Assembly (NCBI GenBank): GCA_964035545.1
Contig: OZ037766.1
Coordinates: forward strand, 7,368,722-7,432,721
Direction of reading: 5' to 3'
Length of the DNA stretch: 64,000 bases
Source: Bugula neritina
Lineage: Eukaryota; Animalia; Bryozoa
The notes below the pieces were generated by a model. It was given only the letters and a program-made list of their open reading frames with translations. It ran no database searches and was not told where the DNA came from. The translations under genes were made by a program, and so were the position numbers. Below, one piece after another: positions 2,452 through 39,359 of this stretch (position 1 is its first letter; every line of letters starts with the position of its first letter).

Positions 2452-2547
2452 ATACCAGAAATAAGCAAACCTGTTCTCAAAATGATTGATTATATGCATG
2501 CATGGTTCAACTTAACAGATTTAAACTTGTTAGAACTTTTTATGGCA

Positions 2548-19167: not shown

Positions 19168-20165
19168 ATGATTTTAGATTGTTTAAAGCTTTTGCTCGTG
19201 TGGTATTTGTTGAGCTCTGAAATCTGTTTGGGCTGCGTTAAACGTACAACAAAAAGAGCTCTTAACTACCGACTACAGATCGCCAAAGATAAAGTTGAAT
19301 CTGACAGATATCGACTTGAAAATTACAACACTCTGCACTTAGTCGAAGTTGACTCTACCAGAAATCAAATCTGTAACAGTACAAGTTTTAAGATGTTTGA
19401 ACAGAAAGTACAACCTCAATGGTAAGTATATCTATTGCCAATATATATGTTTTTATTTAAATAATAGTTAAAGTTTCTATTATTATTCATATTGAATTGT
19501 TATAAAAACATAACTTTATTGCAGCAAATATTTTTTAAGCTCTTTGATTAAATTCTTATATTAGGGATTGTTTTTTTAAATTTATCAACTATAACACATG
19601 TGTGTGCTTAAAATTTGAACATTGTTGACCTGCAATCAGACAGTCTTTCCACTTCTGGCTACTCATTATAAAATTTATAAAATGAAAATAGCAACAATGA
19701 AATTTTAAGTTTTTCTATTATATTATATTTAAAAACAAATTTGTAATAATAATTTTATTATATTATAATGTTCAATAATATCATTAATAACAACTTTTTT
19801 AGCACATATAATGTTTTATCATTTCATAAATCCTCTCTTTTTAATTAATAAATAACACATAATTAAATAAATAAACATAAAAAATTTTTTTTAGGTTTCG
19901 GGAGACTTGGCAAGCAAACACAACAAAAGAAGACGGGTTTGAGATATACCCACCAACTTTAGAACACCACCCCTGTTGTCCAAACTCATGGTGTGACATT
20001 AAAACTGGCGCTGACAGCTCTGTCCCAGGAGTAGTCATGGAATATAAAGACGATACTGTCATACTGAAGCACAAATATGGTAACTGTAACAAGAGAGGTT
20101 ATAAAATATATGAGCCTGTAAGAATATCATTATCCAAATCTTGTCACTGCGTAAGAGCAGGTTAA
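19168..20165 (+). CDS. Secreted IL-17-like cytokine, paralog D (174 aa from ATG 19168; alternative ATG 19129); exons 19168-19421 and 19895-20165
   Basis: Signal peptide MILDCLKLLLVWYLLSSEICLG. Donor TG|GTAAGT and acceptor TTTTTAG|G split a Trp codon as in C. Exon 2 reads WFRETWQANTTKEDGFEIYPPTLEHHPCCPNSWCDIKTGADSSVPGVVMEYKDDTVILKHKYGNCNKRGYKIYEPVRISLSKSCHCVRAG*, a clear paralog of C. Confidence 0.85.
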
Positions 20166-22755
20166 AAGCAGCTGTTATCTCATCAAACGCATGCTGACGA
20201 GATTAGTGTACAATTGTATAACTTAGACAAACCTTTTGGTCACTAATGTTTATACATACTATTTCTTAGCTAAGCACTACCAAGGCCCGGTGGAACTATT
20301 GTCATAATTTTATTTATCAATCATTTTTGCCATATCCGCTATTAATATTACTTATATTTATTTATTTTATACAAATATATACGATATTTTTACAAGGATG
20401 GTGTTACTGTGTGTATAGATATCTATTGTGGCTGCATGTATGATCAGTGAGTGAGAATTCACTGCATACTACCAGCAATCTCTATTTTATTTATCACGCT
20501 GATAAAGATTTACAACAATTTATATTATATCACATCATATTATATTATAGTATATTACATTATATTATATTATCTTACATTATTTTATATATGAAGTGTT
20601 TATACGGATTGCTTTCTTTATACACATGCTTGTGTACAAAGAAGCATGCATACTTAAACATTGTTTCTTTTGTTCAGGCAAATTTTTTTGCAAATAAATA
20701 ATTAAATGAGGGATTAAATTTGAGAAACTTTTTTCTGCAAATGCATCATTACACTGCGCAGCTGCAACTGATGAAATATTCAGGTATACGAGAAGCATTT
20801 TGTTTTTATTACTTAATTACTTTATTTACTTTATGCTATCCTGTAAAGATAAAATGTTCACTAATGTATATTCACGTTAGTAATATCATGCTGCCCATTA
20901 CTTGATGTGTGCATGCATGGAGGGTATAGCAGTAACATTATGAAGCTTTCTGATAAAAAAACAGACAAATTGAAACTACCTGCTGCTTGACTTTTGGAAA
21001 CCAACAGCTAGCAATGAATTCCATAAGTATTTTATTGCTGACTCAATAGATTGCATATAAAAGAGATGCATAATATATTGTTGTTATAATGATTTCATTA
21101 GAAGTTGGTTTTTTGAAAATTTAGGATTTCTCAGACCTAAGTTTGGATAAAGGATTATCCAATGAAATGATAACATTACTATACTATTCTAATAAGTAGG
21201 GAATTTGGTAAATTTCATTCTATAGCAAAACTGACTGCTGTGCAAATGAGTAATATCATGTAAAGAGCTAGCAATGTGGAGAAAACTCCTGCCTCTATAC
21301 TTCCTTGTTGCAATACATATCATAGTGAAGTAAGTGTTCCAGTGTTGTATTTGTATTATAGTAGCATTATGTCTTACTCAACTATCCAATAGACTGCCTA
21401 CTGGATGGAAAACAACAAAAATTTCTACTTGGCCCAGGGAAAGGCGATAGTCCAAAAGTAGACATGTATTCAGTGTATTATAACATGTATTCAGTGTATT
21501 ATAACAACAGTATTTGTTATCATCATGCTAACCAGTGTTGGTGTTTGTACTTAGGTGTGCCTAGATCTGAAATTTCTATTAGCAGTAATTAGTATGTGTC
21601 TTGAGTACCTTAATTGAATAAAAAGATTGTGATTTGCTAAAAAAATATATAAAATGGGTTAAAAAGAAATTGCAAAGCTTTTTGTCTCCATGTGTGGAGA
21701 GGATTTACGAACATCCACACAAGTTTCAATGTTGTTTTTATCAGACCATGTGCTTGGAAGTTTCCAAAATGTTTTTCAAATTATTCTTATAATAAGTGGG
21801 TGCTGACTTATTTTGTATTTTCCCCGTCATTTGCCTATATGTTTATGTTTGGAAAGATTGGTAATGCTGTCAGTCTAATAGTAAAGTGATACCATACTAT
21901 ATCCTATATACCTTGCTTTGGTTTTATAATCCACATGAAAGCTTTTAGGTACATTGCACCAAAATTTTATCAGAGTTTTAGCTTTTTATACTCTTTACTT
22001 ACCAAAAAGCAAATAAAACTGAATACAGTTATTAATGCAAGTATTCCTATTCTACATTAATAGAAAAAATAGTCAAATAAATGAAAAACTAAAAACATTT
22101 ATATTTGGGTTACTGGTAGGTGAATTGGAATCATTGCTTCCATTAAATCATCACATTTAAAAGCTCCTAGCCTTTGAAATGCCATTTTTGTAGACAGTAA
22201 TGCACTAAAAGCATTGACCAGTGCAGTTGTGACTTGTGACAGCAGTTAGCAAGATTGAATCAGCTTATATGCAAACTTCAAACTTTTTTTCTGATAGTGA
22301 TTAGACAAATATTAATAGAATAGCAGAAAATTATAAACACTGAACTTAAACTATTATAGTTCAATATTTATAATTATAAAAATGGTTTGTATTTGGAGTT
22401 GTACCCTCACCAAACAACAGGAATTTGTAGGCAAAGATCTCTAGAAAATTATTTTTTGATGATCAGAGGTTTTTAGGTTGATCACATATTTTGGAAAAGG
22501 GTTAAAGGTTAATGAATATATCGCGCTATATTTTGGTGCCTTGAAATTAAAAAGTCAATTTGATTTCAAAACCAAGTCCAAAGAGATGTAGGAATAAATT
22601 ACTTATACGATGTTTGGGTAGTTTTTGCCTACACCATTTTGACTTTGGTCGAATCATAATATCAAAATATTGCAAACGTTGTCCCAAAACCAAACTGTGA
22701 CAACTTACTTCTTACTTCTAGTTCTTAGTATCACTATTAGTATTAGTATTAGTAT

Positions 22756-23061
22756 TGTTATAATTTTCAGTTTTAGGGTTGATGTACTATCCAGAGAGTC
22801 TATTTGTCTATTATAGAACTGCACCAGGCTAAGTCGAGTGAACGAGTATATTTTATACACAACTATACATTATAAAAACACGATACATTATTTCAAACAA
22901 GTTACACATCTAATCTATTTCACACTCTAGCTTCGACTGAGTTAGCAGCGGGAAACTACAATTGCTGCTAACTATCAACTACGCTAATTGGCTATCCATT
23001 GTTCCGGGTCAATTACGCGACCCTACACGTTGTGCTGCTGGTAGTTCCACGAACCACCACA
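22756..23061 (-). repeat. 3' LTR (LTR-A)
   Basis: TGTTATAATT...CCACCACA; direct repeat of 31731-32036. Confidence 0.96.
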
Positions 23062-23095
23062 CCGCCCCCACCAGCAGAAACCTATCTTTCTGATA
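23062..23095 (-). other. Polypurine tract of the gag-pol unit with preceding hairpin
   Basis: Minus strand: TATCAGAAAGATAGGTTTCTGCT-GGTGGGGGCGG|TGTGG, abutting the 3' LTR. Confidence 0.85.
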
Positions 23096-23340
23096 TATAT
23101 ATAAAAAAACATTCAATAGTAATTGCAGACATCAGTGGACAAAAATAATACATAATATACAGGAAGAGACATAATAATAGACAGAGTCACGGTAACGATC
23201 CGTTGCATACAATTGGCCAGCTATAGATAGACGAGGAATACTAGCTAGCTGTGGTAGTAGACAAGGATTAACCTGTCTAGCAGTTAAGCATTTACACGAG
23301 TTTGGTTCCTCACCAAATGTGGAGTATTCTGGGTAGCATA

Positions 23341-24128
23341 CTAGAGTCCTTGTTGGGCACGCCGGTGCTTGGCTTGGCATGTACGCAGTTTCCGTTTCAT
23401 ACGGCATACGGATCCCTTGAGCTGGAAGAGTCCTGTTGTAGTGTTAAGTAGGTCTGGTGCCAGCTGGGTGAACTCTTCTTGTAATCGTAGGAGGCGTTCT
23501 TCTACTGTGGCTAGTCGTACCGGGTCGGGGGACGGTGTCCGTCTGCGGCGTAAGGGTGGACTGGGGGACCTGGTCCGTCTCTTCGCCGGGGTAGGGGAGA
23601 TCTCTCCTTCTTCTGGATATGTAGTTTCCTCGGGGGTGTATGTAATTTGAGGGCGGTCAGACACCAACGGGGATTGTTGGCGGGCGTTGTCTAACACACG
23701 TTGGAACCCCGAGGATAGAACGGCTAATAGCATGGCCTTCTTTACCAGAGGTCGTATATATGTGAGGAACTCCGGGTACAGCTTAGCGTCGACCACATAG
23801 TTTTCTCCAGGGAAACAGCCCGCCGCTCTGTGTTTGGTGACGGGGTAGGGATACACATCATTGTACCCGCAGGGGCAGAAGGTCAGTAGGAGGTGAGCAT
23901 TGACGTGTAGTTTAAGGGAGCGGTGAGAGGCGCAATCTTCACCACAGATCTGGCATCTCGTCCGTCCTCTGGACCCCCAGGCTGTTTCTATTTCTTCTTC
24001 GGTTTGTGGAGACACCCACCGCCAACGGCGGCGTAGTGGCTCAGGCCGGTCACCACTAGCCTGGTCCTCCGGATACGGAGCGGGAAGTGTTCTATCCCGT
24101 ACCCTGGTTGTAGCGGGTCGAGTGTAAT
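23341..24128 (-). CDS. Accessory ORF3 in the env position: C2H2 zinc finger, second C-x-C...H...C motif, R/S/P-rich basic tract and C-terminal coiled coil; probably a 3' exon of a spliced RNA
   Basis: CQICGEDCASHRSLKLHVNAH; CPCG...KHRAAGC; AKRRTRSPSPPLRRRRTPSP; LATVEERLLRLQEEFTQL. No upstream ATG, but a branch point CACTAAC (24154-24148) and acceptor CTTTTTCAG| at 24129/24128. Confidence 0.75.
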
Positions 24129-24441
24129 CTGAAAAAGTTTCAACAGTGTTAGTGCAGTACACTGCCGTGTTGTCAGCTTGAACAGCTTGGCAACTCCTAA
24201 TTCAGTTACCTCGTAGAGATTAATGATAGTGAATAGTCAGATAGAACCGTATTGCAATGAGATTATAAAAATCTCTAAGTCAAACTGAGTTCTTACTACG
24301 GTATTTCACTAACCTATCTCCAGCTCGATTGATTCAGTGAGTCAGAGCTGAGCGATGCAATCTAGTTTCGTATTAAGATATAGTTAACTCACCCCACGAT
24401 CTGTTGTCGTAAGACATACTGAATATGTGAAATGGTTTGAA

Positions 24442-27400
24442 CTACTGCTTAGAAACACGTCTACTCCTGACTGCATCAGCGTATGAAAAGATCGAGCAAC
24501 GTGGTTGGGGTGCGTGATTAAGACTTTGTGCCCCCGGCGGATGAATTTTATTTCTATTTCCGCCGATGTAAAAGTTGATATTTCCGTGGTGTTGACAACT
24601 CCCACATTTGCTCGATTCTTTTCTCGTACGGTTTTCCCCTAAACTTTCATGTGTGCCGCTTTTAACGCAGTCACATACGAAGTCCTTCAAGTATGCGGGG
24701 GGTTGCCTCGTACGCTGTCCCCTTTCTAGGGGGGGTGACACGCTTGCCGGTTCGTTAGTAGGGGCCTCTAATGGCGTCTCTACTTCACCGTCAGCAGTCA
24801 CCTCTTCTTGTTCTCCGGATGGAGCCCCTCCCTCCGTGGGGGTTTGCACTTCCGGAACCGGCTCGGTTTCTGGAAGTGATGGAATCAGACTTGGCGGTGG
24901 CGGACACGCTTCTGTTGGCAGAAGCTGCCGCTCCTCTCTCACCAAGTTTTCTTCCCGCGGTATGACCACTTCGTATTCAGGTCCATGCCGCCGTCGCCCG
25001 CGCGTTGTTGTCTGCCTTCTGGGCTCTAACAACGGGGGGGCTTCTCCCACTCCGCCGGGGCTAGCCCAATACGGTTTCAAGCGAGACTCATTCTGGATAG
25101 ACACCTGTCCTGAGCGCTCAATCTTGTACGTATGATTGGGCATAGCCTCGACGACCACGTAGGGGCCTACGAACTTAGGCTTCAGCTTATCAGCCTGTCC
25201 GCGGCGCCTACGGTAATTGACCATCCACACCTTATCTCCCCTTTGATAGAGAGGGGGTTCATCGGAATCTTCGTGCCGCACCTTCCACTGCTGTTGACGC
25301 AGTATATCGTGTGCGGCCTTCATCCGTTCCACTAGTTCACTGGCATACTCGTGAACCGAGTTATCTTGCTCTGGAACGTGATAGGCGAGATGGTCAGGGA
25401 CACGAGTCTCTCTCCCGAGCATCAAGAGGTTTGGGGTCTCACCAGTACTGGTGTGTGGGGTGCTACGGTATGCACGCATGACTTGTGGCAACACCGTATC
25501 CCATTCCTCTTGACCTCGTCCAAGGAGGAGACTCCGGAGCGCATCACCTAGCATCCGGTTGTTGCGCTCCACCACCCCATTACCTTGAGGGTGGTAGGGG
25601 GTGGTCCTGCTCTGATTTACTCCCCAGAGGTGGCAAAGGTCGCTCGTCAGTTGAGACTGGAATTGAGCGCCTTGATCAGAGTGTATCTGTTCGGGAAGCC
25701 CAAAATAACAGAATACATGTTGGTCTAGCGCCCTGGCCACTGTTGGGGCTGATGCATCTGGGATGGCCAGAGCATCCGCCCACCTAGTAAAGTGGTCGGT
25801 TAGTACTAGGATCCAATTATTGCCTCTGGGGGTCAGGGGCATGGGTCCGACCAGGTCTACAGCGACTACTTGCCAGGGCCTACCAGCATATAGCCTCCGC
25901 CGTCCTGCTTCACCAGGGGGGCGGCTATGCTTACTGGCCTGGCAGATCTCACACTGTTTGACTCTGAGCCGGACGTCACGCTCCATCTGCGGCCAATACC
26001 ACCGGAGTCGTAATTTGGACATCACTCGCTTGACCCCTGCGTGGGCCTGCTTGTGAGTATCCCAAATCAACTCACGGCGGATGGCTGTGGGGCAGACTAC
26101 CCTCTTCCTTTCCGGGTGTCTACCGCTGGCAGCTAGAGAGATGGTTAGCAACCCATCCTGCCCGATCCGCAGCAAGTCCCAACGCTGACAGTATAGCCTG
26201 AACTCGGCGCATCCCTGTCGTATGCGTTCCTCGCTGGGTCGTCGCCCTTCCCTTTTGGCCCGGTATATGTCTGCCACGACTCCAGGCAGCTCTTCTTGGA
26301 GCTTCTTCAGCTCTCGAACATTACCGGCCAGTACAGGGTTGGCGCGGAGGTTTTGTACATCCTCCGGGGATTCATCAACTCTCTGCCTGAGTTGACCTTG
26401 ATCCCAGCCAAACGGTGCTCCGCGATGAGCCAGCGTCTCCAACTCGCATCGTGGGGGACCTCCATCCCTCCTCTCGATGTTGAGACACTGCTTGCAACCT
26501 CCGTCAGGTCGGCGACTCAACCCATCCGCATTGCTGTGTCTCTTGCCCGGTCGATGTTCGATCCGGTACGAGAATTCAGCTAGGATTTCGAGCCACCGGG
26601 CGACCTGACTAGAGGGCTCTGCTCTCCTGCACAACCAGATCAGCGAGGCATGATCCGTACGCAGCCGGAACTTCCTGCCATATAGGTATGGTCTGAAGTG
26701 CTTCACTGACTTGATTACTGCCAGCAGTTCCTTGCGGGTAGTGCAGTAATTTCGTTCAGCGGGAGAGAGAGACTTGCTGTAGTAGGCTACTACTACTTCT
26801 CGGCCTTCCTGCACTTGTGACAGCACAGCGCCAACATTCTGGTCACTGGCGTCCGTGTCTAGGATGTACTCCAGAGTGGGGTCTGGGTAGGCCAAGATGG
26901 GCGCCGTTAGGAGGCAGCCCTTGAGGCGGTCGAACGCTTCTTGTTCGACTGGAGTCCACTGCCACGTCACTCCCTTTGCGGTAAGCCGGTTTAACGGCTG
27001 GGCTATGCCCGCAAAGTCTGGTATGTATTGCCTGTAATACCCTACCAGCCCCAAGAAAGCCCGGAGTCCGGTCAAGTCTTGGGGGGTGACCCAGTCTTCT
27101 ACTGCCCGTACCTTCTCGGGATCCGTTGCCACGCCGTTTCGACCGACAACGTGCCCCAGGTACTTGACCTCCGGCTGCAACAGAGCGCACTTGGAAGGTT
27201 TGAGCTTAAGACCGGCACCTCGGAGTCTCTCGAAAACCTCCTGCAGACGACTGACATGTGTCTCGAAGTCTGGAGAGATTACGATGACATCATCGAGGTA
27301 GACCAGCAGTGTCTTCCAATGGAGTCCGCTAAGGACTTGTTCCATCAGCCTCTGGAAGGTGGCTGGGGCGGAGGTTAACCCGAAGGGCAGCACCTTCCAC

Positions 27401-29010
27401 TTCCACAAACCGTCCCGTGTGATAAACGCCGCTTTCTCTTGGGCGTCGGGACTCAGAGGAACCTGCCAATAGCCGCTTAGCAAGTCTAACGTACTGAAGT
27501 ACTTGCTGCCGGCTAGAGCGTCCAATGACTCGTCAATACGAGGTAGAGGGTAGGCGTCCTGTATGGTTACGCTATTGAGTTTGCGGTAGTCCACACAGAA
27601 CCGCCAACTGCCGTCTTTCTTCCGGACCAGTACGACTGGCGAGCTCCACGCACTATGGGCGGGCTCTATCAGTCCCCGGTCCAGAAGATCCCGTACTTGT
27701 CGGCTAACCTCCTTCTCTTTCTCCGGCCCCAGCCTGCGTGTGGGCTGCCGGACAGGGACTGTCCCTGCAGTCAGCGGTATTTCGTGTCTGACAATTCCAG
27801 TCAGTCCCACGTCATGCTCCCCGCTGCTGAACACATCATCGTAGTCGCGTAGTAACTTGGCCATAGCTTGGCGTTCTCTGTTACTCGCGCAGCCGCCACT
27901 GGCTGTCTCGTATAACTCCCGGAGATGTGTTGGGACTGCCCCTCGTCCCTGAATAGGGTGTCGAGGGAGTGCCTCTGTCGCATCACCCAGCGACGGGCCT
28001 ACGTCTCCCTCTTGAACAGAGTGAAAACGGCCCAGCATCGACTCAGCCGGGAGCTTGATAGGCTCGGTAAAGGGGTTGACGCACTGCACTAAGATCTCCC
28101 CTTGCTCAGTCAGCTGATTCAGACTGCTGGCAAGTTGGATCTTTTCGTGCGCGCCTTCAACCACCCCGAGTCCAGAGATCCGGCTACTATTCACCCTGCA
28201 GTGAATGGTAGCCCGGGAGCGGCCTGGTATGGTACGGTTGCGTACCACTTGCACACCTCCCACTAAAGGGCAGCCGAACTTGTCGACGCAGGCGAGTTCC
28301 CGCCCGGACATCATCATTGCAGATCTGCTAAAATCTATGTGACATCCGTGCCGTTTAAGGAACGGCATCCCGAGGATAGCATCCTCCTTGAGCTGACTGA
28401 CGATAAACGTCTCTTGGATCGTTTGATCACGGACTTGTCCCGTCAGCTCAATTATACCATAGAAGGGAAGGCATGACCCGTCAGCTAGGGTGCCGTATTC
28501 CCCTTCGTATGCTTCCATCTCGCCCCTGACCCTAGCACTGAGGGTGTCGAAGAGTTGGCGGCTTAAGAGGTTTGTGGTACAGCCCGAATCAATGAGAAAA
28601 GTAACAGCTTTGCCTTCCAGTTTGCCGGGCAAGAAATAGCTGTTCCCATGGGGCTGCACCTGAACTCTCCCTTCAGGCCTTACTCTCGCAGGGAGTACCC
28701 CCCTCGCTTTGGGTCGCGAAGGAGGTCTCTTGGGGCGGTGATAGGCAGGCCTCGGGGGTGCCGAGGCTAGATTCTCAGCTACCTTTGTGTGCTCCCATCC
28801 AGATTCTTGGACTTGTAGCCCTGTGAATCTGTTGTGAAGGGGCATAGAAAAGGCAGCCGCGGGGCGAAGCCCCTTGCTGGTCCGTCGTGGCTGTTGCCAC
28901 TGTTGGTTGCCAGTACGCGGTACCCGTCTGGGTGACCTGCGTTTCTTCTTCCCTAGAGGTTTCGTCGGCCCGCGGAAGGTGGGAACATCTGCGGGCCGCG
29001 GTAGTTTAAC
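24442..29010 (-). CDS. pol: Pol polyprotein (protease, RT, RNase H, integrase), reached by -1 frameshift from gag
   Basis: FLIDSGCT protease; LPFGL and YLDD RT; DTDAS/ELLA/RTDH/ADGLSR RNase H; HHCC, VDLVG/HSDQG/VERNNR DDE and KFVGPY integrase motifs; no stops in ORF 24442..29070. Confidence 0.97.
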   Translation of the reverse strand, partial: VKLPRPADVPTFRGPTKPLGKKKRRSPRRVPRTGNQQWQQPRRTSKGLRPAAAFSMPLHNRFTGLQVQESGWEHTKVAENLASAPPRPAYHRPKRPPSRPKARGVLPARVRPEGRVQVQPHGNSYFLPGKLEGKAVTFLIDSGCTTNLLSRQLFDTLSARVRGEMEAYEGEYGTLADGSCLPFYGIIELTGQVRDQTIQETFIVSQLKEDAILGMPFLKRHGCHIDFSRSAMMMSGRELACVDKFGCPLVGGVQVVRNRTIPGRSRATIHCRVNSSRISGLGVVEGAHEKIQLASSLNQLTEQGEILVQCVNPFTEPIKLPAESMLGRFHSVQEGDVGPSLGDATEALPRHPIQGRGAVPTHLRELYETASGGCASNRERQAMAKLLRDYDDVFSSGEHDVGLTGIVRHEIPLTAGTVPVRQPTRRLGPEKEKEVSRQVRDLLDRGLIEPAHSAWSSPVVLVRKKDGSWRFCVDYRKLNSVTIQDAYPLPRIDESLDALAGSKYFSTLDLLSGYWQVPLSPDAQEKAAFITRDGLWKWKVLPFGLTSAPATFQRLMEQVLSGLHWKTLLVYLDDVIVISPDFETHVSRLQEVFERLRGAGLKLKPSKCALLQPEVKYLGHVVGRNGVATDPEKVRAVEDWVTPQDLTGLRAFLGLVGYYRQYIPDFAGIAQPLNRLTAKGVTWQWTPVEQEAFDRLKGCLLTAPILAYPDPTLEYILDTDASDQNVGAVLSQVQEGREVVVAYYSKSLSPAERNYCTTRKELLAVIKSVKHFRPYLYGRKFRLRTDHASLIWLCRRAEPSSQVARWLEILAEFSYRIEHRPGKRHSNADGLSRRPDGGCKQCLNIERRDGGPPRCELETLAHRGAPFGWDQGQLRQRVDESPEDVQNLRANPVLAGNVRELKKLQEELPGVVADIYRAKREGRRPSEERIRQGCAEFRLYCQRWDLLRIGQDGLLTISLAASGRHPERKRVVCPTAIRRELIWDTHKQAHAGVKRVMSKLRLRWYWPQMERDVRLRVKQCEICQASKHSRPPGEAGRRRLYAGRPWQVVAVDLVGPMPLTPRGNNWILVLTDHFTRWADALAIPDASAPTVARALDQHVFCYFGLPEQIHSDQGAQFQSQLTSDLCHLWGVNQSRTTPYHPQGNGVVERNNRMLGDALRSLLLGRGQEEWDTVLPQVMRAYRSTPHTSTGETPNLLMLGRETRVPDHLAYHVPEQDNSVHEYASELVERMKAAHDILRQQQWKVRHEDSDEPPLYQRGDKVWMVNYRRRRGQADKLKPKFVGPYVVVEAMPNHTYKIERSGQVSIQNESRLKPYWASPGGVGEAPPLLEPRRQTTTRGRRRHGPEYEVVIPREENLVREERQLLPTEACPPPPSLIPSLPETEPVPEVQTPTEGGAPSGEQEEVTADGEVETPLEAPTNEPASVSPPLERGQRTRQPPAYLKDFVCDCVKSGTHESLGENRTRKESSKCGSCQHHGNINFYIGGNRNKIHPPGAQSLNHAPQPRCSIFSYADAVRSRRVSKQ
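28949..29010 (-). other. Candidate -1 ribosomal frameshift signal (slippery heptamer plus pseudoknot)
   Basis: G TTA AAC in the gag frame (29010-29004), 5-nt spacer, 8-bp stem CGGCCCGC/GCGGGCCG, and loop TTCCC complementary to downstream GGGAA. Confidence 0.7.
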
Positions 29011-29840
29011 CCCTGATTTAGGAAGGGACAATATCGGCGGAAGTGTCCTTGATTTCCGCACTCCCAGCAAAAACTGACTGTTTCTCCCTGTGGCGGCGCC
29101 GATGGCCGCATGGGCTCAGGGGCGGTACTCACTGGGTTTTGTGGTGTCAGTGTTGCTATCAGCTTGGCTAGCATGTCCGTCAGTTGAGTGACTTTTGATG
29201 CCGTCGCCAACTGGGACACGGCAGCCGCGGCGGGGGTTTCCTCCCCTTGTCCCGCGGCCGTGTCTGCGCGGTCTATCTCCACTTGGCGGGAGCTTCCGCG
29301 ACTTTTATGCATTTGGTTAGCTAGGAGGTAAGCTTCCCCCTCAGTCAGAGCATCTTCAACGGTGGTGACTCCCCTAGCTAGAAACTGGTGGTGGAGACCC
29401 AGATCGTCGACAGATGCTATGAAAGCGTCGAGGGTGTACCTCTCACGGTTGACTGGGGGCAAGTCGCTGTACGCGATCTGTGCCAGCTTCATGACCGCGG
29501 CGGCATGCTCCCGCAGCGGGGTGCGGGGATCACGCCGCAACCTCTGTAATCGGGCCCTGGCATCTGTAGCCAAGAGGCCAAAGCGGGCCCGCAGAGAAGC
29601 AAAGATATTATCAATGTCTACGCCCAGCCCATAGGGCTTGGCTTTGTCCATCAATGCCATTCTAAGCTTCAGCAGGGCCACCCTAGGGGGCCACTGAGCG
29701 ACGTCCATTACGTCGCTAAACTCTTGGATGAATTGTTCCACCTCCTCTTCACCCGTGAAGGTGGGCGCCTTTAACCTGTAGTGGTATTCAGCTAGTTCTC
29801 GTGGAACCCTTCGCTCTTCTACTACATGGTTAACAGGCAT
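28953..29840 (-). CDS. gag: Gag (295 aa) with CCHC zinc knuckle
   Basis: PTFTGEEEVEQFIQEF capsid-like start; CWECGNQGHFRRYC knuckle; ATG 7 nt after the second PBS; overlaps pol in the -1 frame. Confidence 0.93.
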   Translation of the reverse strand: MPVNHVVEERRVPRELAEYHYRLKAPTFTGEEEVEQFIQEFSDVMDVAQWPPRVALLKLRMALMDKAKPYGLGVDIDNIFASLRARFGLLATDARARLQRLRRDPRTPLREHAAAVMKLAQIAYSDLPPVNRERYTLDAFIASVDDLGLHHQFLARGVTTVEDALTEGEAYLLANQMHKSRGSSRQVEIDRADTAAGQGEETPAAAAVSQLATASKVTQLTDMLAKLIATLTPQNPVSTAPEPMRPSAPPQGETVSFCWECGNQGHFRRYCPFLNQGLNYRGPQMFPPSAGRRNL

Positions 29841-29847
29841 TGTCTCT

Positions 29848-29865
29848 ATCCCACTGCTGCCACCA
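29848..29865 (-). other. Primer-binding site 2 (tRNA-Leu type), directly upstream of gag
   Basis: TGGTGGCAGCAGTGGGAT, 1 nt from the CA end of LTR-B; complementary to a tRNA-Leu(AAG/TAG)-like 3' end ATCCCACYGCTGCCA-CCA; identical to PBS1. Confidence 0.9.
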
Positions 29866-29866
29866 C

Positions 29867-30793
29867 TGTAGTAATTCGTGGAATTACTAGTTTGTGGGTT
29901 TTTATTGTGTATTACTAATTACTGCATCATGCTGTGAGGTTACAGAAGGAACCGAACAAATGGATTAGGAATGCGAGAATTATATTTAAGTAAACAACAT
30001 ACGAGTAAAAATAACATACATCAGCCGAGAAAGAATATACAAAAGTCGTAGTACTACATGAGTTAGCCTGCCAGTTCCAATCTGCCTGTGGGCGGCTGAA
30101 GGTGCTGTATATATACGAGAGCTCGCCTCTGATTGGTTGGTATTAATATCACGTCATCCTGGCCATTACTTCAAGGTTCATCCGGGCAAGCTGATGCATA
30201 GCTGTCACTTTGTTGATGATGGAAAATACCCACACTTGCTCAGACGACTGTAAGCATGATTCATCGCAGCCACAGCTGGCTGGATCGTGATTGGTCCATG
30301 GGTTCCGGTGGACCGCGGGAAGTCCCCGCATTTCACATGTGCCGTACGGCACGAAGGAATGTTAACATGTAGTCAACTGATGTATTGATGAGTGAGTCCA
30401 GCTAAGTGAATGGCCATAGCGTCGCTGGTGCGGAACAGCATACGGTCTCTCTAGTAATGGTGATGCCGTCAAGCTAGGCATTAACTACTAGTACTGGCAG
30501 CCTGTTATGATGACCATGCGTACGCATTACGTTACATTTATTACACTGCAGTCCATGGTTATAGCTGCCGGCGGTGTTCCATTGCCGATGGCGTGACATT
30601 AGTAAACTACTTACGTGACATTAGTAAACTACCTACGTGACATTAGTAAACTACCTACGTGACATTAGTAACTACCTACGTGACTACTAACCGCTAACTA
30701 CTAACCATAGCGGGTTAATTACATCACACATTGACGATGTGTGATTATACTACGACAGGTGAATAATAATATAGATAACCAAAACTCACTACA
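29867..30793 (-). repeat. Internal LTR-like unit (LTR-B, 927 bp), distinct from the terminal LTRs
   Basis: TGTAGT...ACTACA inverted termini with a PPT at its 5' edge and a PBS at its 3' edge. On the minus strand, in order: tandem repeats, CRE-like TGACGTGA (30156-30149), CCAAT (about 30135), TATATATA (about 30115-30108), AATAAA (about 29906-29901). Single copy in the window, so LTR status is inferred from flanking signals. Confidence 0.8.
30592..30684. repeat. About 4.3 copies of a 22-bp tandem repeat CGTGACATTAGTAAACTACCTA in the U3-like part of LTR-B
   Basis: Directly visible; adjacent units, no spacers. Confidence 0.92.
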
Positions 30794-30828
30794 CTCCCCC
30801 CACCATCGGAAAGTACACCTTTCCGATA
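30794..30828 (-). other. Internal polypurine tract (end of cargo unit) with preceding perfect hairpin
   Basis: Minus strand: TATCGGAAAG-GTGTA-CTTTCCGAT-GGTGGGGGGAG|TGTAGT; similar to the terminal PPT cassette. Confidence 0.83.
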
Positions 30829-31078
30829 AGAAAGGAGTACAAGAAAACAAACAGACAAAAAAAAGAAAACACAATTAGAATACAATATAAGAACGCCACC
30901 AAAAAAAAAATATTCACACAGAAACTGCAACAATATAACAGACATTCGGTATACACTACTTACAAATAAGGGAAACTACAGGAGCACAGTCTACAAGTAC
31001 AATAAGCTGGCTAATACCTTAGGATCAGACTTCTGTGTTAGGTTACGAAGGTGTCACTGCTGATATGGCTGGTCGGGT

Positions 31079-31309
31079 TTACCGGGGTCGGGGATATTCT
31101 CTGCCTTGGACATTACTACAAGCAGAGGCTGAGGCCGTGAGATTTTCCTCGGGCTCCTCTGAGCTTGAACACCTATCAAGGAGGGGGTTGACATGAAGGG
31201 CGTGTCCATCATCAGAGCGAAAGTCGGCAAGTCGTTGCCCTGCTCTGGCTATATGCGCCTGTCTTTCCAGCTGCTCCTTAGTGCCACAAAGAGGACGGGT
31301 ACTCTCCAT
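31079..31309 (-). CDS. Cargo-unit ORF B (76 aa from ATG), unknown function
   Basis: MESTRPLCGTKEQLERQAHIARAGQRLADF...; GC-rich; no recognised domain; may be part of a longer disrupted or spliced ORF. Confidence 0.3.
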   Translation of the reverse strand: MESTRPLCGTKEQLERQAHIARAGQRLADFRSDDGHALHVNPLLDRCSSSEEPEENLTASASACSNVQGREYPRPR

Positions 31310-31401
31310 CACGACGCCGTCTGCCGTTCAGTAGTACGCCGAGGTTCTTGAGACGTTTGCCGCCACTTCCAGCGTAAGCTCGACACCTGCTCGTACAACT
31401 C

Positions 31402-31677
31402 TTACTGAAGTGCTTCCCTACAGCGTAGCGTAGCCAGGGAATATGTATAGACAGTGCTCCCCCACGCCACCCGTACTTCCTTCACCAAAGGTCTGCTGAA
31501 TGAGCGGTGTGAATTGTCTACTTGTGCATTGCATTCGCACTGGCAAGACGCCAGACCCTCCCGGTCTTGGGCACTACACGCGTTAGAGAAATACCTGTTA
31601 AAAGGTCGCTGGTGCATTCGATATCTAATGTCATTGTAACAGTCCTGCCTGTAATCTCCTATCCTTGGAAACGGCAT
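31402..31677 (-). CDS. Cargo-unit ORF A (91 aa from first in-frame ATG), Cys/His-containing, unknown function
   Basis: MPFPRIGDYRQDCY...ACSAQ...SCQCECNAQVDNSH...; starts about 35 nt after PBS1, where gag would normally be; no recognised domain. Confidence 0.4.
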   Translation of the reverse strand: MPFPRIGDYRQDCYNDIRYRMHQRPFNRYFSNACSAQDREGLASCQCECNAQVDNSHRSFSRPLVKEVRVAWGSTVYTYSLATLRCREALQ

Positions 31678-31711
31678 CGGTTCTTCATATCCCACAGCAT
31701 TGTACACAAAT

Positions 31712-31729
31712 ATCCCACTGCTGCCACCA
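31712..31729 (-). other. Primer-binding site 1 (tRNA-Leu type)
   Basis: TGGTGGCAGCAGTGGGAT, 1 nt inside the 5' LTR. Confidence 0.92.
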
Positions 31730-31730
31730 C

Positions 31731-32036
31731 TGTAGTAATTTTCAGTTTTAGGGTTGATGTACTATCCAGAGAGTCTATTTGTCTATTATAGAACTGCACC
31801 AGGCTAAGTCGAGTGAACGAGTATATTTTATACACAACTATACATTATAAAAACACGATACATTATTTCAAACAAGTTACACATCTAATCTATTTCACAC
31901 TCAAGCTTCGACTGAGTTAGCAGCGGGAAACTACAATTGCTGCTAACTATCAACTACGCTAATTGGCTATCCATTGTTCCGGGTCAATTACGCGACCCTA
32001 CACGTTGTGCTGCTGGTAGTTCCACGAACCACCACA
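31731..32036 (-). repeat. 5' LTR (LTR-A)
   Basis: TGTAGTAATT...CCACCACA; three mismatches to 22756-23061. Confidence 0.96.
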
Positions 32037-32600
32037 GTATTACTATTACTATTAGTATTAGTATTACTATTAGTATTACTATTAGTATTAGTATAAGTAT
32101 TACTATTAGTATTAGTATTACTATTAGTATTACAGTATGAGTATTAGATTAGTATTACTATTAGTATTAGTGTTACTATTAGTATTACTACAGTACAAGT
32201 TGAAGTTAAGTACAAGTACTAGTACTACTACTACTAGTAGTAGTAGTAGTAGTAGTAGTACAAACTGAAACTACGTCTACTCATGCTAAGTGTAGCTAGT
32301 ACTACGTCTACTCTACTAGAAGTATTAGTAGTACTAGTACTAGTAGTATTACTATTAGTATTAGTAGTACTACTACAACTGTACAAGCTTTTTTGTTTCA
32401 ACCTGACCCTACTATTAGATTAATACTAATACTAATAGTAGTACTAATACTAATAGTAATAGTAATACTAATAATAGTGTAAGTATTAATAAATTTAATG
32501 CTATCAGTATCAGTATGAGTATCAGTATAACTATTACTACCATTACTAATATTTACTAATAATATTAGTATTAGATTAGTATTACAATTTAAATTGGCAA
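32037..32600. repeat. Degenerate (TATTAG/TATTAC/TAG)n simple-repeat field; target of the Gypsy insertion (continues at about 22730-22755)
   Basis: Hexamer and trimer repeats on both sides of the element. Confidence 0.88.
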
Positions 32601-33807: not shown

Positions 33808-36800
33808 ATGCTTCGTACCAGCTTGGCCAAAATGAAGTTGGCAGCTACATCTGCTAGTATGAACCAGTTCATGGTAAGTACGATGTTTTAGCTTGTACAC
33901 ATTACCTTGTTGCTTTACCTAATATAAAATCAAGTTGCTTAATTTTGTGCATAATATAATGACGTAACTAATGTAGTATTTTATGTGATAATTGTTTCAT
34001 TTTTGATACGTATTACAAATTTTAGTTGAATTTCAATGTTATTTTTATATAATGATTTGAATTTATAATAACATGCTAGTGGATAGGTAATTTCTTAAAT
34101 TAATGTATCAAATGAATTGCATAGACTGCTATGCAAATGGGTTAGATAGAATAAGTATGTAACTAATTTTTCGAGATTTATTTAAACCCAACGACTTTGT
34201 GGTGTCCAAATTAATAGGTTGCTAAAAGTTGACTAATTTTTAGTAGCTTCTAATTCAGATTGTTGGACGTATATAAACGTATGTGTTTAGATAGTTGAAG
34301 CTGTAATTTACTAATTATGCTTTGCTGATTTTACAACCTGTTTTTAGCTTGTTGGCTAGGTTTTAAAAGTGTGCAAAGAATGGCACTTTAATACCTTAAA
34401 GTTAGATTGAGTTGTCAAAAAAGTAGTTAATACTGAAAGTTGATTGAAAACTAAGAATGGTAATTTGTAGTATGTACTAAATATCACTCAAAACCGTTAA
34501 CTATTGCAAAGGTGTTAAAATATTATATTGTATTAAATATGGTGTAATATGCAGTCATTACATTTATATTCCAATTATAATACAAGACATTATGCTAAGC
34601 CATTGTTGATACCCAGTTCGAAGTTACTCACCCGTTTCTTGTAAAGAACACAGTCTATGTTACTTTAGAGGTTCCAGTCTCCAGTTCTGACGATACAAGC
34701 GAATAGGTGTGCCAGCAGTGAGGCTCTCAAAACTTCACTCTATGATTACCATGTCGAAAAGGGTAAGCACAATGTCATAGTGTTTAACATTACTTTTATG
34801 GTGTACAAGTTTGTCAATTGGTGTGATCAGGAAATTATCACAAGTTAATATAGTTATCCGTATAAGTAGCAACCGTGGTCTAGGGGTTAGAGCGTTGGTT
34901 TAGTAAGCACGAAGTCATGGGTTCAAGCCCCGACATAGGCCATTGGTGATGCTAAGAAGTGTATCCAGTCATAACTGCTCCTGTGCCTCGTCTGAATTAG
35001 TCCTTAGCCCAATTTTACAAAAAAATCTTCTATCAGGGATTTTCTCACAGGGATATGACTATAATTTTGCTTGAGTTGTTTCAATGTAGTCGTCTAGTTT
35101 GAATTTTTAGGTGGGAAGATGGTGGATTTTGCTGGTTGGCTAATGCCGGTGGTGTACTCCAGTGATACCATTATTCAGTCTCATCTTCACACCAGACAAA
35201 GTTGCAGTATATTTGACGTTTCCCACATGTTGCAGACTAAAGTACACGGGAAGCACTCTGTGGACTATTTAGAGTCTTTAGTTGTAGGAGATATAAAAGG
35301 TGGGCTGCACATTCTAATTCTATCATTTCTCTTATTTGGTATTTCTAGCTACAAATTATGTATCAACAACAACAGCAGAGATTGACACTGTAACAATTAC
35401 TTGCAAGTTGTGTGTGGGTGCAGATGATAAAGTGACCTTGACCTTGAGGCTCATCTTGACCTTGAGCCTCACTTTGAATATAGTGTATAGTTCATATGAG
35501 TTGCAGGTCTGGCAGATGACACAGGGACTCTTACTGTCTTCACTAATCAGCAAGGCGGCATTTGTGATGACCTCATAGCTAACAAGACGTCTGACGGGTA
35601 CATCTATGTCGTGTCTAATGCCGGCTGCCGAGATGGTGATCTCGCACTGATGAAGGTAGTAACACTCCCACAGTTTTAATATATATGTACAACATACGGG
35701 TTGCTGTGTACAGCTGACTGCTGTGTATAGCTCCACGTGACATTATAAATATATATTGGTGTTTTTAAGTCACTGACTGCCTTACTCTGAACATTGAAGT
35801 GTTCTAACACTTTTATAATTTATATTGAAACTGGATCTCAGTTAGACAGCTCAATGATTACATTTATATTCTTATCTGTTAATGCAGTGACTGAAAAAGT
35901 TGTGCTTTTCAAACATTTGAATTAAGTTCTCTTGGGTAAGGCAACTCCTACTCACGTAATGCAGCTCGGATTTGCCAAACCCAACTTTTTCTTGCTTTAA
36001 AAATATTTTTTGAGGGAGAATATTAAATTCGCAAACCTAATATCAATGGTGGACATTGTTTTATAGCTGCTTGGAAATGCTGTTGAATTTTAATTAATAT
36101 TATGGCTGTTAACAGTCTCTGTTAATAATTATCTTCAACTGTATTTGTATAATTATATGATATACTATAACGGTTTGTTGTGTGAATATGGAGACTTGCT
36201 GTGTTTATTTTTACACTCCGTATTTCTTATTACCCTGAAACTTGAAATCATAATGAATACAGGTTAAAAATATATTGCAGAGCTGGGCCGGCCCAAGTCA
36301 TTCACTCGACATACTTGAAAATTCTTTACTCGAGTCAACTTGCTAAAACTATTTACTTGACTGCAAGTCTATGAAATTTAAGAAAATGTAGCACACAAAA
36401 CTATTTTTGGTGACTCAGAGCTAGTATGTCTACTAGCCCTGAAATACCAGTAGGTCATATCAGCACAGCTTTAACTCTAGGAGGTAATCTGAACATGCCA
36501 CTTGATTTGTTTGTTCTTCTAACTTTGTAGCGGAAATTAGAAGAGTGCAAGTCTAAAGGATTGGATGTGGAACTGGAAGTGTTAACTAATCCACTTGTCG
36601 CAGTGCAAGGACCTCTCATGTCTAAGGTGAGTAGAGAGTAATCGACACAAGTAAAACTTGCTGTAGAAATCAGAATATCTTCAATGGGCAGATTTTTTTC
36701 TGATCTTTATCACTTTGTTGGCCTGATCTCTTTGGTAACTTTAAATAGAAATTAATTTAAGAGTAGAATATAAGTTGTGTAGTCTATACAAGTAATGATT

Positions 36801-39359
36801 TTTAATTTCGGAGTTGTGAATATACGCTTCTAAAGTTGCATCTTATTGCTAAATGGCAGCTGTTACATGATACACAGCGAAATCATGTTGCAGTGATTTG
36901 CTTATCCAATCAGAAATAGCTAAATTATTTTCCCCTGATGAGTTGTAATGCTTTATAACACAATAAAGAAAGGGCAAAGTTACAAGAAAAATTATAAAAC
37001 CATCTACAAACTGTAGCCATAAGTTTGACAACATTACAATGACCATTCGCTACAGGTGCTGCAAGCTGGTGTAGATGTAGATCTTACTCAACTGTATTTT
37101 ATGAACACCACTATGGCGAGTGTCTTCGGAGTGGAGGGTTGCCGGATTACCAGGTGTGGATACACAGGAGAGGATGGTGTTGAGGTATGACAACTCCTAA
37201 AACTAACCAGTATCCGTAAAGCAGGTTTATAGCGAGTAGTTGTGAGCTGGTATACAGTACACTGTAGCTGGTATTGTAATGGCCATATCTAAATGTTTGT
37301 ATAGCACGTATATAATTGTGACCACATTTCATGAGAAGAAATGTTGTATTTTAAATATTGTAAGCTATAATTTCATATATGTTTAATAAACTATATACAC
37401 TTTTATTGTTAACCGTCAAATCAGTTCTTACTCACCCGTTTATTGACTGATGCTCTTAATTTTAAAATTAACTGCATTTGGTGTTTTGATTGTCAGAATT
37501 TAAATTGGCTGGAAATGAAATACAAATACATATGCACAGTTTCAGCTTGTTTTCTAATAAAATCAGGAGTAAATAATTCAACTCTTTATATTGCTATCAT
37601 TTTTAGAAGCACAATTTTAGCAGTAATAACTGTCTTTATAAACCAGCTAAGAGATTCCAGATGGTCGATATCACTGCTTCTTTATGTTGTATTTCCAGTG
37701 ATGTACACGTAGATCACTGGAAATGTTAACAGGTAGGTTATAACATGATGATGTAATTGGATCAATTTAAACTGAAATCTCCATTCTAGATTTCCATACC
37801 TGAAGGCAAAGAGCACCATATAATGGACTGTTTACTCTCCTCCAAGGAAGCTGGTGTGAAGTTGGCTGGGTTGGGGGCGAGGGACAGTCTAAGGCTTGAA
37901 GCTGGTTTGTGTCTCTATGGAAACGACATTGACGAAACTACAACCCCTGTTGAAGCTGCACTCACTTGGCTCATAGGTTTGTTACTCACGTCTTGGTTTA
38001 TTGATCTGTTACTAAGCTTCCTTCCGTGTTATCTGGTTTCCTGACATTACTTTGTAAGTATTAAACTTAGTTTTTGCCTACTTTCTTGCAGGAGTTGGCT
38101 CCTCGTCTTCCTATTCTCATTCTCTATTCTCTCAAAGCATTAGTTTTCCCATTAAATCATTGACTGCTGAGAAACTCTTGATTCGACAAATATATTTATG
38201 TTTATTTTGTTTGAACAGCTAGGAATATAAAGGATAAATGAAATGGTTGAGGCTCACATTTTAGTTTGCTATACGGGTGACACTTCAACCCTCCCTACTC
38301 AGGGATTACTATGACTCTCTGGTTAATTTTTTATGTCTGGCAGTAATAGTTAAAACCTGCCATAAGTTGTGAATGGTGGCCTATTTCAATGTGAGTATAA
38401 GCACTAAGACTAATACAATAACATGCTGTTGTACGTAGAGTGCAACTTCTGTGTGGTGTATATTGCTAGGTAAACGCAGAAGGCAAGATAGCAATTTTCC
38501 AGGATCTGACGTTATACTACAGCAGCTGAAGGAGAAACCTGCAAGAAAGAGAGTTGGTATTATAACTGAGTCTGGCCCACCACCACGTGGTACGTGCTGT
38601 AAACTGCCCACAAAACTAACTGGAAAAAATACCAGGAGTTTATGTTTACTATTCATGCTTCAATTAGGAGCATGCAACTCCGATTTTGTGGTTATTTTCT
38701 ACATTTTTGATGTGGCGGTGGCTCAAATATGTAATATGCATCAACTTTGCCTAACACTGATTGGTTTCCTATTCCTACAGCATTAAATGTACTGAAAATA
38801 GCCTAAGCAGTGCCACAGCACTTTGATATATGCATGCACTTACCAAGTTGTGGTAGTCCATAGGTTATCAATTAGCTCTCTTAGATAGCCCGACACAAAG
38901 CTGTGTAGTTGGGCATTTAAATGGTTCAACCTTGACTTTAAGCAAAATATTTTCTGAATTGGTGTGATATATTATTTTATATCCTATTGTATTGAGCGCT
39001 GTATTTTCATAAATATTGAGAAGACAATTCTATGCATAATGGTGTTTGTAAAAACTGCCTGCATTTAGTAAAGGAAATATCACTACTTGGTATTACCTAA
39101 TCATGTTGAAAGATTTGATAGCAAATTTATTGAATATGCTTTAGCTGGGTCGAAGGTCATAGTTGATGAGAAGGAAGTGGGCAAGATTACCAGCGGCGTA
39201 CCTTCCCCCTCCCTTAAAAAGAACATAGCTATGGCGTACATCCAAACTCATTGCTCTAAGCTAGGAACTGAGGTTATGGTAGAGACCAGAAATAAACTAA
39301 GCAAAGGAGTCATCAGCAGAATGCCATTTGTACCCAGTAACTACTACCTCAAGAAATAG
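33808..39359 (+). CDS. AMT: Aminomethyltransferase, mitochondrial (glycine cleavage system T protein), 414 aa; exons 33808-33873, 34669-34762, 35111-35299, 35507-35655, 36531-36626, 37056-37184, 37790-37976, 38470-38589, 39145-39359
   Basis: Transit-peptide-like N-terminus; [98 protein letters not shown]. All introns GT-AG with consistent phases (1245 nt total). Probable non-coding first exon ends at 33590. Confidence 0.97.
34866..35076 (+). mobile_element. tRNA-Thr-derived SINE, copy 3 (in AMT intron)
   Basis: A box TGGTCTAGGGG, TTAGTAA loop, B box GGTTCAAGCC, same body as copies 1 and 2. Confidence 0.85.

What the first reader, a model, noticed from the sequence alone, without database searches (positions are those of the whole stretch)
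22756..32036. Two-unit Gypsy element with two different LTRs, two PBSs and two PPTs; predicted to alternate between circularly permuted forms
Seen: on the minus strand the order is LTR-A(32036-31731), PBS, unit 1 (about 0.9 kb, small ORFs), PPT, LTR-B(30793-29867), PBS, gag-pol-ORF3, PPT, LTR-A(23061-22756). There is one GTAT TSD, at the outer ends only. LTR-B has TGTAGT...ACTACA ends and its own promoter and poly(A) motifs. It is flanked exactly by a PPT and a PBS rather than a TSD, so it is not a nested solo LTR. Known: ordinary three-LTR tandems from recombination or TRIM arrays have near-identical LTRs; here the middle LTR is three times longer and highly diverged, yet the element is young and intact. 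Inference: on an A-to-A transcript, priming at PBS1 with the terminal PPT regenerates A-I1-B-I2-A. Priming at PBS2 with the internal PPT would give B-I2-A-I1-B, also with TG...CA ends. The element could thus switch which LTR is terminal and run cargo and gag-pol from separate promoters. I do not recall this as a described system, but could not check the literature.
Basis: partly seen in the sequence, partly recalled or inferred. Interest (0 to 1): 0.95.

Follow-up and report, generated by a model that had tools for sequence, protein, structure and literature searches.

The report
Recombinant tandem Gypsy element, mixed LTRs
A young, intact 9.3-kb Gypsy-type retrotransposon really does carry a second, unrelated LTR with its own primer sites in its middle, but it is best read as a tandem recombinant between a coding element and a non-coding partner that share primer sites, which is a known kind of product, rather than as a new alternating system.

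Summary
On the minus strand the order is LTR-A, PBS, a 937-bp non-coding unit, PPT, LTR-B (927 bp), the same PBS, gag-pol-ORF3, PPT, LTR-A. One 4-bp duplication sits at the outer ends. LTR-A and LTR-B resemble each other only at their tips. The two internal units share an identical 20-nt PBS and about 60 nt of homologous sequence next to the PPT, so they come from two families served by the same primer and integrase.

Three-LTR "complex" elements with outer duplications are already described, and so are mixed Tf1/Tf2 tandems made at a shared PBS. The new feature here is an unrelated middle LTR.

Two adjacent bases at the end of the 5' LTR-A match the LTR-B type, while the 3' LTR-A does not. 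This looks like a recombination joint at the PBS.

Unit 1 shows no coding capacity, so "cargo" is not supported. Alternation between permuted forms is mechanistically conceivable but has no evidence.

The decisive test is a census of copies in the host genome. I could not run it, because I left out fetching DNA of relatives: I could not tell whether that step was barred.

The parts
32037..32040 (.). Target-site duplication, upstream copy (4 bp)
   Evidence: Read directly. It matches 22752-22755. It lies in a 6-nt microsatellite.
31731..32036 (-). LTR-A, 5' copy (306 bp, TG..CA). Its last bases are of the LTR-B type.
31711..31730 (-). PBS1: 20-nt string identical to PBS2. The complement of a ...CCA 3' end begins 1 nt after the LTR.
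30794..31730 (-). Unit 1 (I1), 937 bp. No coding capacity was found. Its last ~60 nt are homologous to the end of unit 2.
30794..30804 (-). PPT1, a G-rich run abutting LTR-B. It is held in a strong hairpin (30794-30837).
29867..30793 (-). LTR-B (927 bp, TG..CA). It has a 22-nt x 4.3 tandem repeat at 30592-30684, a TATA-like motif and an AATAAA.
29847..29866 (-). PBS2, identical to PBS1.
28953..29840 (-). gag (295 aa, CCHC knuckle), unbroken.
24442..29070 (-). pol reading frame, -1 relative to gag with a 118-nt overlap, unbroken. Domains: PR 28629-28351, RT 27627-27148, RNase H 26958-26572, IN 26091-25438, SH3-like 25239-25117.
23341..24417 (-). ORF3 gene. My by-eye model is exon 1 24417-24393, intron 24392-24129 (GT..AG, 264 nt, 38% GC) and exon 2 24128-23341. 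The exon-2 frame is unbroken. It belongs to a conserved family of unknown function.
   Evidence: The exons were not joined.
23062..23072 (-). PPT2, a G-rich run abutting the 3' LTR-A.
22756..23061 (-). LTR-A, 3' copy (306 bp).
22752..22755 (.). Target-site duplication, downstream copy (4 bp).
   Evidence: Read directly.

Best explanation
This is a tandem ('complex') recombinant of two related LTR-retrotransposon families that use the same tRNA primer site, a homologous PPT region and similar LTR tips. One family is an autonomous Ty3/gypsy element (gag-pol-ORF3). The other is a non-coding, non-autonomous partner.

The joint was made through the shared PBS, with two possible routes. Route (i) acts inside the particle: the growing minus strand reaches the PBS of one RNA, continues on the PBS of a co-packaged partner RNA, and then completes the usual transfers. 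Route (ii) acts in the nucleus: the single-stranded PBS end of a partner cDNA anneals to the PBS of a resident copy. Either route gives LTR-A, PBS, I1, PPT, LTR-B, PBS, I2, PPT, LTR-A.

The favoured parents are A-I2-A and B-I1-B.

Shown: the anatomy; the shared cis sites; that A and B are otherwise unrelated; that I1 is non-coding and I2 is intact; and the 2-nt patch of LTR-B type at the joint between the 5' LTR-A and PBS1.

Inferred: the recombination route, the parent assignment, and the present behaviour. For the present behaviour, LTR-B probably drives gag-pol-ORF3 mRNA, and LTR-A probably drives a short RNA that ends in LTR-B. Only rare read-through RNA would template the whole unit. Reverse transcription of that RNA could give composite, permuted or resolved simple forms.
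For: The PBS is identical over 20 nt. Together with the last 10 nt of the LTR, 30 nt are identical between the A5'/I1 junction and the B/I2 junction. The last ~60 nt of I1 and I2 align at 76% identity, share the core of the PPT, and have a hairpin that keeps one pair through a G-C to A-T change. All LTR tips fit one pattern, while A and B are otherwise unrelated.

The outer LTRs match at 303 of 306 bases and there is a single outer duplication, which points to one insertion. Two of the three differences are adjacent, lie at the very end of the LTR next to PBS1, and make the 5' copy equal to LTR-B. A recombination joint at the PBS would leave exactly this.

I1 has no similarity to 235 gag, pol and ORF3 queries, and its longest ORF has 0 hits among 1.84 billion representatives.

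Both mechanisms are published. Template switching between co-packaged RNAs gives three-LTR elements with outer duplications (PMC1950507). Recombination of cDNA before integration gives the same kind of product. Tf1 cDNA inserts at the identical PBS of a resident Tf2 and forms tandems separated by one LTR, and this also happens with wild-type integrase and in wild isolates (PMC11042837). Chimeras of an autonomous and a non-autonomous element (Dasheng/RIRE2) are cited in PMC5473765.
Against: No census of other copies was made, so 'one-off' is an inference. The 2-nt patch could instead be a dinucleotide substitution in the 3' copy. It could also arise when an already composite parent is copied with primers on both PBS. 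Homology also exists on the PPT side, so the parents could be A-I1-A and B-I2-B. The in-particle and in-nucleus routes cannot be told apart from one locus. A 99%-identical ORF3 copy exists in a metagenome (P0162), so the coding family occurs elsewhere, but its LTR context is unknown.
Confidence: 0.62

Rival explanations
1. This is a stable two-unit element family that is copied as a whole. It switches between A-I1-B-I2-A and B-I2-A-I1-B according to which PBS/PPT pair is used, and it runs each unit from its own promoter.
For: There are two complete PBS/PPT pairs, and both LTR types have integrase-type tips. LTR-B has promoter-like and poly(A) motifs directly upstream of gag. All parts are equally undecayed, with CpG o/e of 0.75-0.99. 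Sabot and Schulman note that each LTR of a complex element could drive its downstream unit.
Against: There is only a single locus and no other copy in the window. Unit 1 has no detectable coding capacity. An A-to-A template must read through the AATAAA of LTR-B. A and B share no R-like homology, so A-to-B and B-to-A transcripts lack matching ends. The two LTR-A copies are not homogenised at their U5 end. Known recombination routes explain the structure without any selection for it.
Confidence: 0.12
2. The same kind of recombinant, but joined through the PPT-side homology. The parents would then be A-I1-A (a small non-autonomous element with 306-bp LTRs) and B-I2-B (an autonomous element with 927-bp LTRs).
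For: The ends of I1 and I2 are homologous over ~60 nt and share a 9-nt PPT core. A 1.5-kb A-I1-A element would resemble known small non-autonomous elements (TRIM-like elements in animals).
Against: PPT-side identity is much weaker than the 20-30 nt of perfect identity at the PBS. This model leaves the A/PBS1 junction native, so it does not explain the patch of LTR-B type at the end of the 5' LTR-A.
Confidence: 0.13
3. Assembly artefact. Separate A-type and B-type elements were threaded together through the shared 20-30-nt PBS repeat.
For: The observed path uses each of the five segments in an order that a repeat-collapsed graph could produce. No read-level evidence is available.
Against: The contig carries long microsatellites and an 850-bp codon repeat assembled without gaps, which suggests long reads. 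The flanks form one interrupted microsatellite with a matching 4-bp duplication. The mixed joint at the end of the 5' LTR-A is not what simple graph threading would give.
Confidence: 0.05
4. An ordinary nested insertion: a solo LTR-B, or a B element, dropped into an A element.
For: Nesting is the commonest cause of extra LTRs.
Against: LTR-B has no duplication of its own. It is abutted on one side by a PPT and on the other by a PBS identical to the first. Only one LTR-B is present.
Confidence: 0.01

Closest known systems
Template-switching 'complex' LTR retrotransposons (Sabot and Schulman 2007, PMC1950507; also Zeng and Sun 2018, bioRxiv 10.1101/452573)
   Same: Three LTRs and two internal domains, a duplication only at the outer ends, outer LTRs nearly identical, and an origin in one round of reverse transcription or cDNA recombination before integration.
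   Different: In the described cases the three LTRs and both internal domains belong to one family, and the switch is placed in R or the LTRs. Here the middle LTR is unrelated in sequence and three times longer, one unit is non-coding, and the joint is at the PBS.
Tf1/Tf2 tandems made by annealing of the cDNA's single-stranded PBS end to a resident element (Li et al. 2022, PMC11042837)
   Same: Two different elements in tandem, separated by a single LTR, with 100% PBS identity directly behind the intervening LTR. It also occurs with wild-type integrase and in wild isolates.
   Different: Tf1 and Tf2 are close relatives that share long identical stretches, including parts of the LTRs. Here only the PBS, the PPT region and the LTR tips are alike. 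Dependence on host recombination proteins cannot be read from sequence.
Autonomous/non-autonomous partner pairs with chimeras (Dasheng/RIRE2, Jiang et al. 2002 as cited in PMC5473765; BARE2 and Veju as cited in PMC1950507)
   Same: A non-coding element keeps the cis sites of a coding partner, and recombinants between the two occur.
   Different: Those chimeras are two-LTR mosaics in plants. This is a three-LTR tandem in what looks like an animal genome.
Tandemly arrayed TRIM / Cassandra-type elements (PMC6934838, PMC4079214)
   Same: Alternating LTR and internal-domain units share LTRs.
   Different: Those arrays repeat one unit with like LTRs and usually arise by unequal recombination, without a single outer duplication.

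Membership tests
Ty3/gypsy LTR retrotransposon (Metaviridae) | pol domain order protease, RT, RNase H, integrase | tested here: met
   Pfam RVT_1 5e-37, RT_RNaseH_2 5e-36, rve 1.5e-15, Integrase_H2C2 1e-14 and Asp_protease_2 1e-5, in that order.
Ty3/gypsy LTR retrotransposon (Metaviridae) | Direct LTRs with TG..CA ends, a PBS after the 5' LTR, a PPT before the 3' LTR and a 4-6 bp duplication | tested here: met
   The tRNA that matches the PBS was not identified (no tRNA gene in the window).
Ty3/gypsy LTR retrotransposon (Metaviridae) | gag with a CCHC knuckle, upstream of pol | tested here: met
   Read directly in the translation. There was no Pfam gag hit.
Env-bearing gypsy-type elements (errantivirus-like) | A third ORF that encodes a membrane-anchored envelope protein | tested here: not met
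   ORF3 has no Pfam or PDB family. It has no hydrophobic segment (highest 19-residue Kyte-Doolittle mean 1.24). I had an envelope protein in mind, and none came back as a hit.
Complex three-LTR elements formed before integration | An internal LTR, two internal domains, a duplication only outside, and outer LTRs most alike | tested here: met
Complex three-LTR elements formed before integration | All three LTRs belong to one family | tested here: not met
   LTR-B shows no BLASTN similarity to LTR-A apart from the tips.
PBS-directed tandem formation (Tf1/Tf2 type) | Tandem units separated by one LTR, with an identical PBS behind that LTR | tested here: met
   20 of 20 nt identical.
PBS-directed tandem formation (Tf1/Tf2 type) | Insertion into a pre-existing resident copy by host single-strand annealing | not testable with these tools
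   This needs population or ancestral-state data for this locus.
Non-autonomous LTR element (TRIM/LARD-like) for unit 1 | No coding capacity, but a PBS and a PPT are kept | tested here: met
   no coding signal; cis sites.
Non-autonomous LTR element (TRIM/LARD-like) for unit 1 | Exists as free-standing copies with its own pair of like LTRs | not tested
   There is no other copy in the window. DNA of relatives was not fetched.
   This requires the host genome or fetched related loci.

The most novel reading that the evidence does not exclude
The composite is not an accident. It would be a propagating two-unit retroelement family in which an autonomous unit and a non-coding unit with an unrelated LTR are copied together. 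Because each unit has its own PBS and PPT, each round of reverse transcription could yield the composite, its circular permutation, or the two simple elements. The outcome would be a retroelement whose terminal LTR, and therefore its promoter, changes between generations.
Probability: 0.12. Interest if true: 0.8.

Novelty: new variant of a known kind. Interest (0 to 1): 0.4.

Why it matters
If the reading is right, this locus is a clean natural example, in what looks like an animal genome, of two retroelement families with unrelated LTRs being joined through nothing more than a shared primer-binding site. This supports the idea that the PBS and PPT, and not only the LTRs, are recombination hot spots. 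Through them, autonomous elements and their non-coding partners can exchange LTRs and promoters. It also warns annotators that three-LTR structures need not have like LTRs. It would matter much more if a census showed that the composite propagates.

Tried and rejected
- **Nested solo LTR.** Rejected on the junction sequences.
- **LTR-A as a deletion derivative of LTR-B.** Rejected: there is no similarity beyond the tips.
- **Unit 1 as a decayed gag/pol or a cargo gene.** TBLASTN found nothing against 235 queries. Pfam found nothing. Its longest ORF has no homologue among 1.84 billion representatives.
- **Ribozyme-bearing retrozyme or another known RNA.** No Rfam hit at E <= 1.
- **ORF3 as an envelope protein.** No family hit, no membrane segment, and a poor structure model (pLDDT 40), so no fold search was run.
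- **A conserved hairpin before both PPTs.** Only PPT1 folds significantly (z -5.3). PPT2 does not. I keep just the one compensatory pair seen in the alignment.
- **Host identification.** The window's proteins are not in the protein collection. A Pfam scan did not return the interleukin-17 family I had in mind for two Cys-rich exons.
- **One paper could not be read.** PMC166684 is not held.
- **Handling of frames and exons.** gag and pol were searched as separate frames and never joined. The two predicted ORF3 exons were searched or inspected apart, and the joined step was left out.


Full report
**Observation**

On the minus strand of the window there is a 9,281-bp element (32036-22756). Its two terminal direct repeats are 306 bp each and identical at 303 positions.

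- LTR-A 5' copy, 32036-31731.
- A 20-nt PBS-like string, 31730-31711.
- Unit 1, which runs to 30794 (937 bp) and ends in a G-rich PPT-like run.
- LTR-B, 30793-29867 (927 bp, TG..CA).
- The same 20-nt string, 29866-29847.
- gag, starting 6 nt later.
- pol, then ORF3, then a second G-rich run.
- LTR-A 3' copy, 23061-22756.

The only duplication is 4 bp at the outer ends. It sits inside a 6-nt microsatellite that continues on both sides. It is in the right phase for a duplication but is only moderate evidence by itself. LTR-B has no duplication of its own. No other copy of any part lies in the 64 kb.

**Coding content**

- gag is 295 aa and has a CCHC knuckle.
- The pol frame lies at -1 relative to gag, with a 118-nt overlap. 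It carries protease, RT, RNase H, integrase and an SH3-like domain in Ty3/gypsy order.
- ORF3 is open over 273 codons.

Count of breaks: gag 0, pol 0, ORF3 0. The frames were handled separately and never joined.

Pol has thousands of relatives. The best is 72% identical and comes from a metagenome. The named relatives are all animal proteins (Trichinella, a pseudoscorpion, a sardine), and some are annotated as retrovirus-related pol.

**Unit 1 and the two LTRs**

Unit 1 has only short ORFs and no Pfam hit. It shows no TBLASTN similarity to the element's own proteins or to 232 fetched proteins, most of them relatives of the element. Its longest ORF has no homologue among 1.84 billion representatives. 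No Rfam family matches anywhere in the element.

LTR-A and LTR-B share nothing detectable except their tips, where all five ends fit one pattern.

The two internal units share the identical 20-nt PBS. Their last ~60 nt align at 76% identity, share a 9-nt PPT core, and have a small hairpin in which one G-C pair is replaced by A-T. Only the unit-1 hairpin is thermodynamically significant.

I conclude that A, B, I1 and I2 come from two related families that use the same primer, the same plus-strand priming region and the same kind of integrase. One is a coding element and the other a non-coding partner.

**The joint**

The 5' LTR-A/PBS1 junction and the LTR-B/PBS2 junction are identical over 30 nt. 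The two LTR-A copies differ at three positions. Two of these are adjacent and lie within the last five bases, next to PBS1. There the 5' copy has the LTR-B version and the 3' copy does not.

Both outer LTRs are normally regenerated from one template in each cycle (established retroelement biology; also stated). This patch therefore arose when this copy was made, or afterwards.

A recombination joint placed at the LTR-end/PBS junction explains the patch directly. It implies the parents A-I2-A and B-I1-B. A joint on the PPT side would leave the patch unexplained. The alternatives I cannot exclude are a dinucleotide substitution in the 3' copy, or copying of an already composite parent with primers on both PBS.

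**Mechanism and what is known**

Three-LTR complex elements with outer duplications and nearly identical outer LTRs were described in cereals. They were attributed to template switching between co-packaged RNAs (PMC1950507). A rice survey added recombination of cDNA before integration, and LTR swapping (bioRxiv 10.1101/452573).

In fission yeast, Tf1 cDNA inserts at resident Tf2 copies by annealing of its single-stranded PBS end. This gives tandems of two different elements separated by one LTR, with an identical PBS behind it. About 4% of wild-type insertions take this route, and such tandems occur in wild isolates (PMC11042837).

Chimeras between an autonomous and a non-autonomous element are also known (Dasheng/RIRE2, cited in PMC5473765).

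The present element fits these kinds. What differs is that the middle LTR is unrelated in sequence and three times longer, and that one unit is non-coding. I therefore rate it a new variant of a known kind, seen at one locus.

With two PBS and two PPT, reverse transcription of a full LTR-A-to-LTR-A RNA could in principle give the composite, its permutation, or the two simple elements.

Three points count against a dedicated system:
- Unit 1 carries no detectable gene.
- LTR-B contains an AATAAA 39 nt before its end, which an LTR-A-initiated RNA must read through.
- LTR-A and LTR-B share no R-like homology, so transcripts that start in one and end in the other lack matching ends.

LTR-A has a TATAAA but no canonical AATAAA. 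These are motif-level observations only.

**Context**

The host DNA is 31-32% GC with CpG o/e of 0.39-0.44. All parts of the element are 39-57% GC with CpG o/e of 0.75-0.99. The element is therefore young here, or recently arrived.

The flanks carry a multi-exon aminomethyltransferase gene, a LINE-type RT tail and two paralogous Cys-rich exons. Together with the animal relatives of pol, this suggests an animal host, but the species was not identified.

[quoted passage not shown] I could not tell whether the bar on fetching a virus of animals by accession, pattern or look-up covers copies of this element. I therefore fetched no DNA of relatives, which means no look-up of relatives' contigs, no pattern scans and no related-locus scans. 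This is why the census was not done.
- The loss is limited for the closest public piece. The only near-identical protein found (ORF3 copy P0162, 3 differences in 273 residues) sits on a 1,057-bp contig. That contig is too short to reach an LTR.
- The two predicted ORF3 exons were not joined.
- I noticed no slip.

**Verdict**

The best explanation is a recombinant tandem made through the shared PBS (confidence about 0.6). The PPT-side variant stands at about 0.13, a propagating composite family at about 0.12, and misassembly at about 0.05.

Interest is 0.4.

Noticed in passing
window 23341-24417 (-): ORF3 belongs to a conserved family: 71 homologues, nearly all from JGI metagenomes, at 44-99% identity. 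It has a CxxC..H..H motif and a long C-terminal helix, and no Pfam or PDB match and no membrane segment. The frame lacks an ATG. A short ATG exon lies 25 nt after the pol stop, followed by a 264-nt GT..AG intron that is AT-rich, and this would supply the start. Conservation among relatives begins at the predicted acceptor. This is a by-eye splice model, and the exons were not joined.
   Followed up: partly
window 22756-32036 against its flanks: The element is compositionally foreign. It is 39-57% GC with CpG o/e of 0.75-0.99, against 31-32% GC and CpG o/e of 0.39-0.44 in the host. This is compatible with a very recent arrival, possibly by horizontal transfer.
   Followed up: partly
window 30592-30684 (LTR-B): 4.3 tandem copies of a 22-nt unit (97% matches) lie in the presumed U3 of LTR-B. 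They look like an enhancer-type repeat.
   Followed up: no
window 30794-30837 (-): PPT1 is paired with an upstream pyrimidine run in a strong hairpin (-25 kcal/mol, z -5.3). The matching region before PPT2 is not significant.
   Followed up: partly
window 35098-39356 (+): Host aminomethyltransferase (glycine cleavage T protein) gene in at least four exons (Pfam GCV_T and GCV_T_C). It begins about 3 kb from the element.
   Followed up: partly
window 13674-13982 and 19881-20162 (+): Two paralogous Cys-rich exons, 41% identical, each ending in a CxC motif. There was no Pfam hit. I had interleukin-17 in mind, but it did not come back.
   Followed up: partly
window 14923-15777: An ~850-bp imperfect CAY-codon microsatellite (His/Gln run in one frame). 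It accounts for the strong GC-skew spike at 14-16 kb.
   Followed up: no
window 2502-3212 (+): The C-terminal tail of a LINE-type reverse transcriptase. Its 41 relatives (up to 75% identity) are all unnamed metagenome or ENA proteins, so it did not reveal the host.
   Followed up: partly
protein P0162 (JGI metagenome contig of 1057 bp): An ORF3 copy with 3 differences in 273 residues, so the coding family occurs in at least one public metagenome sample.
   Followed up: partly
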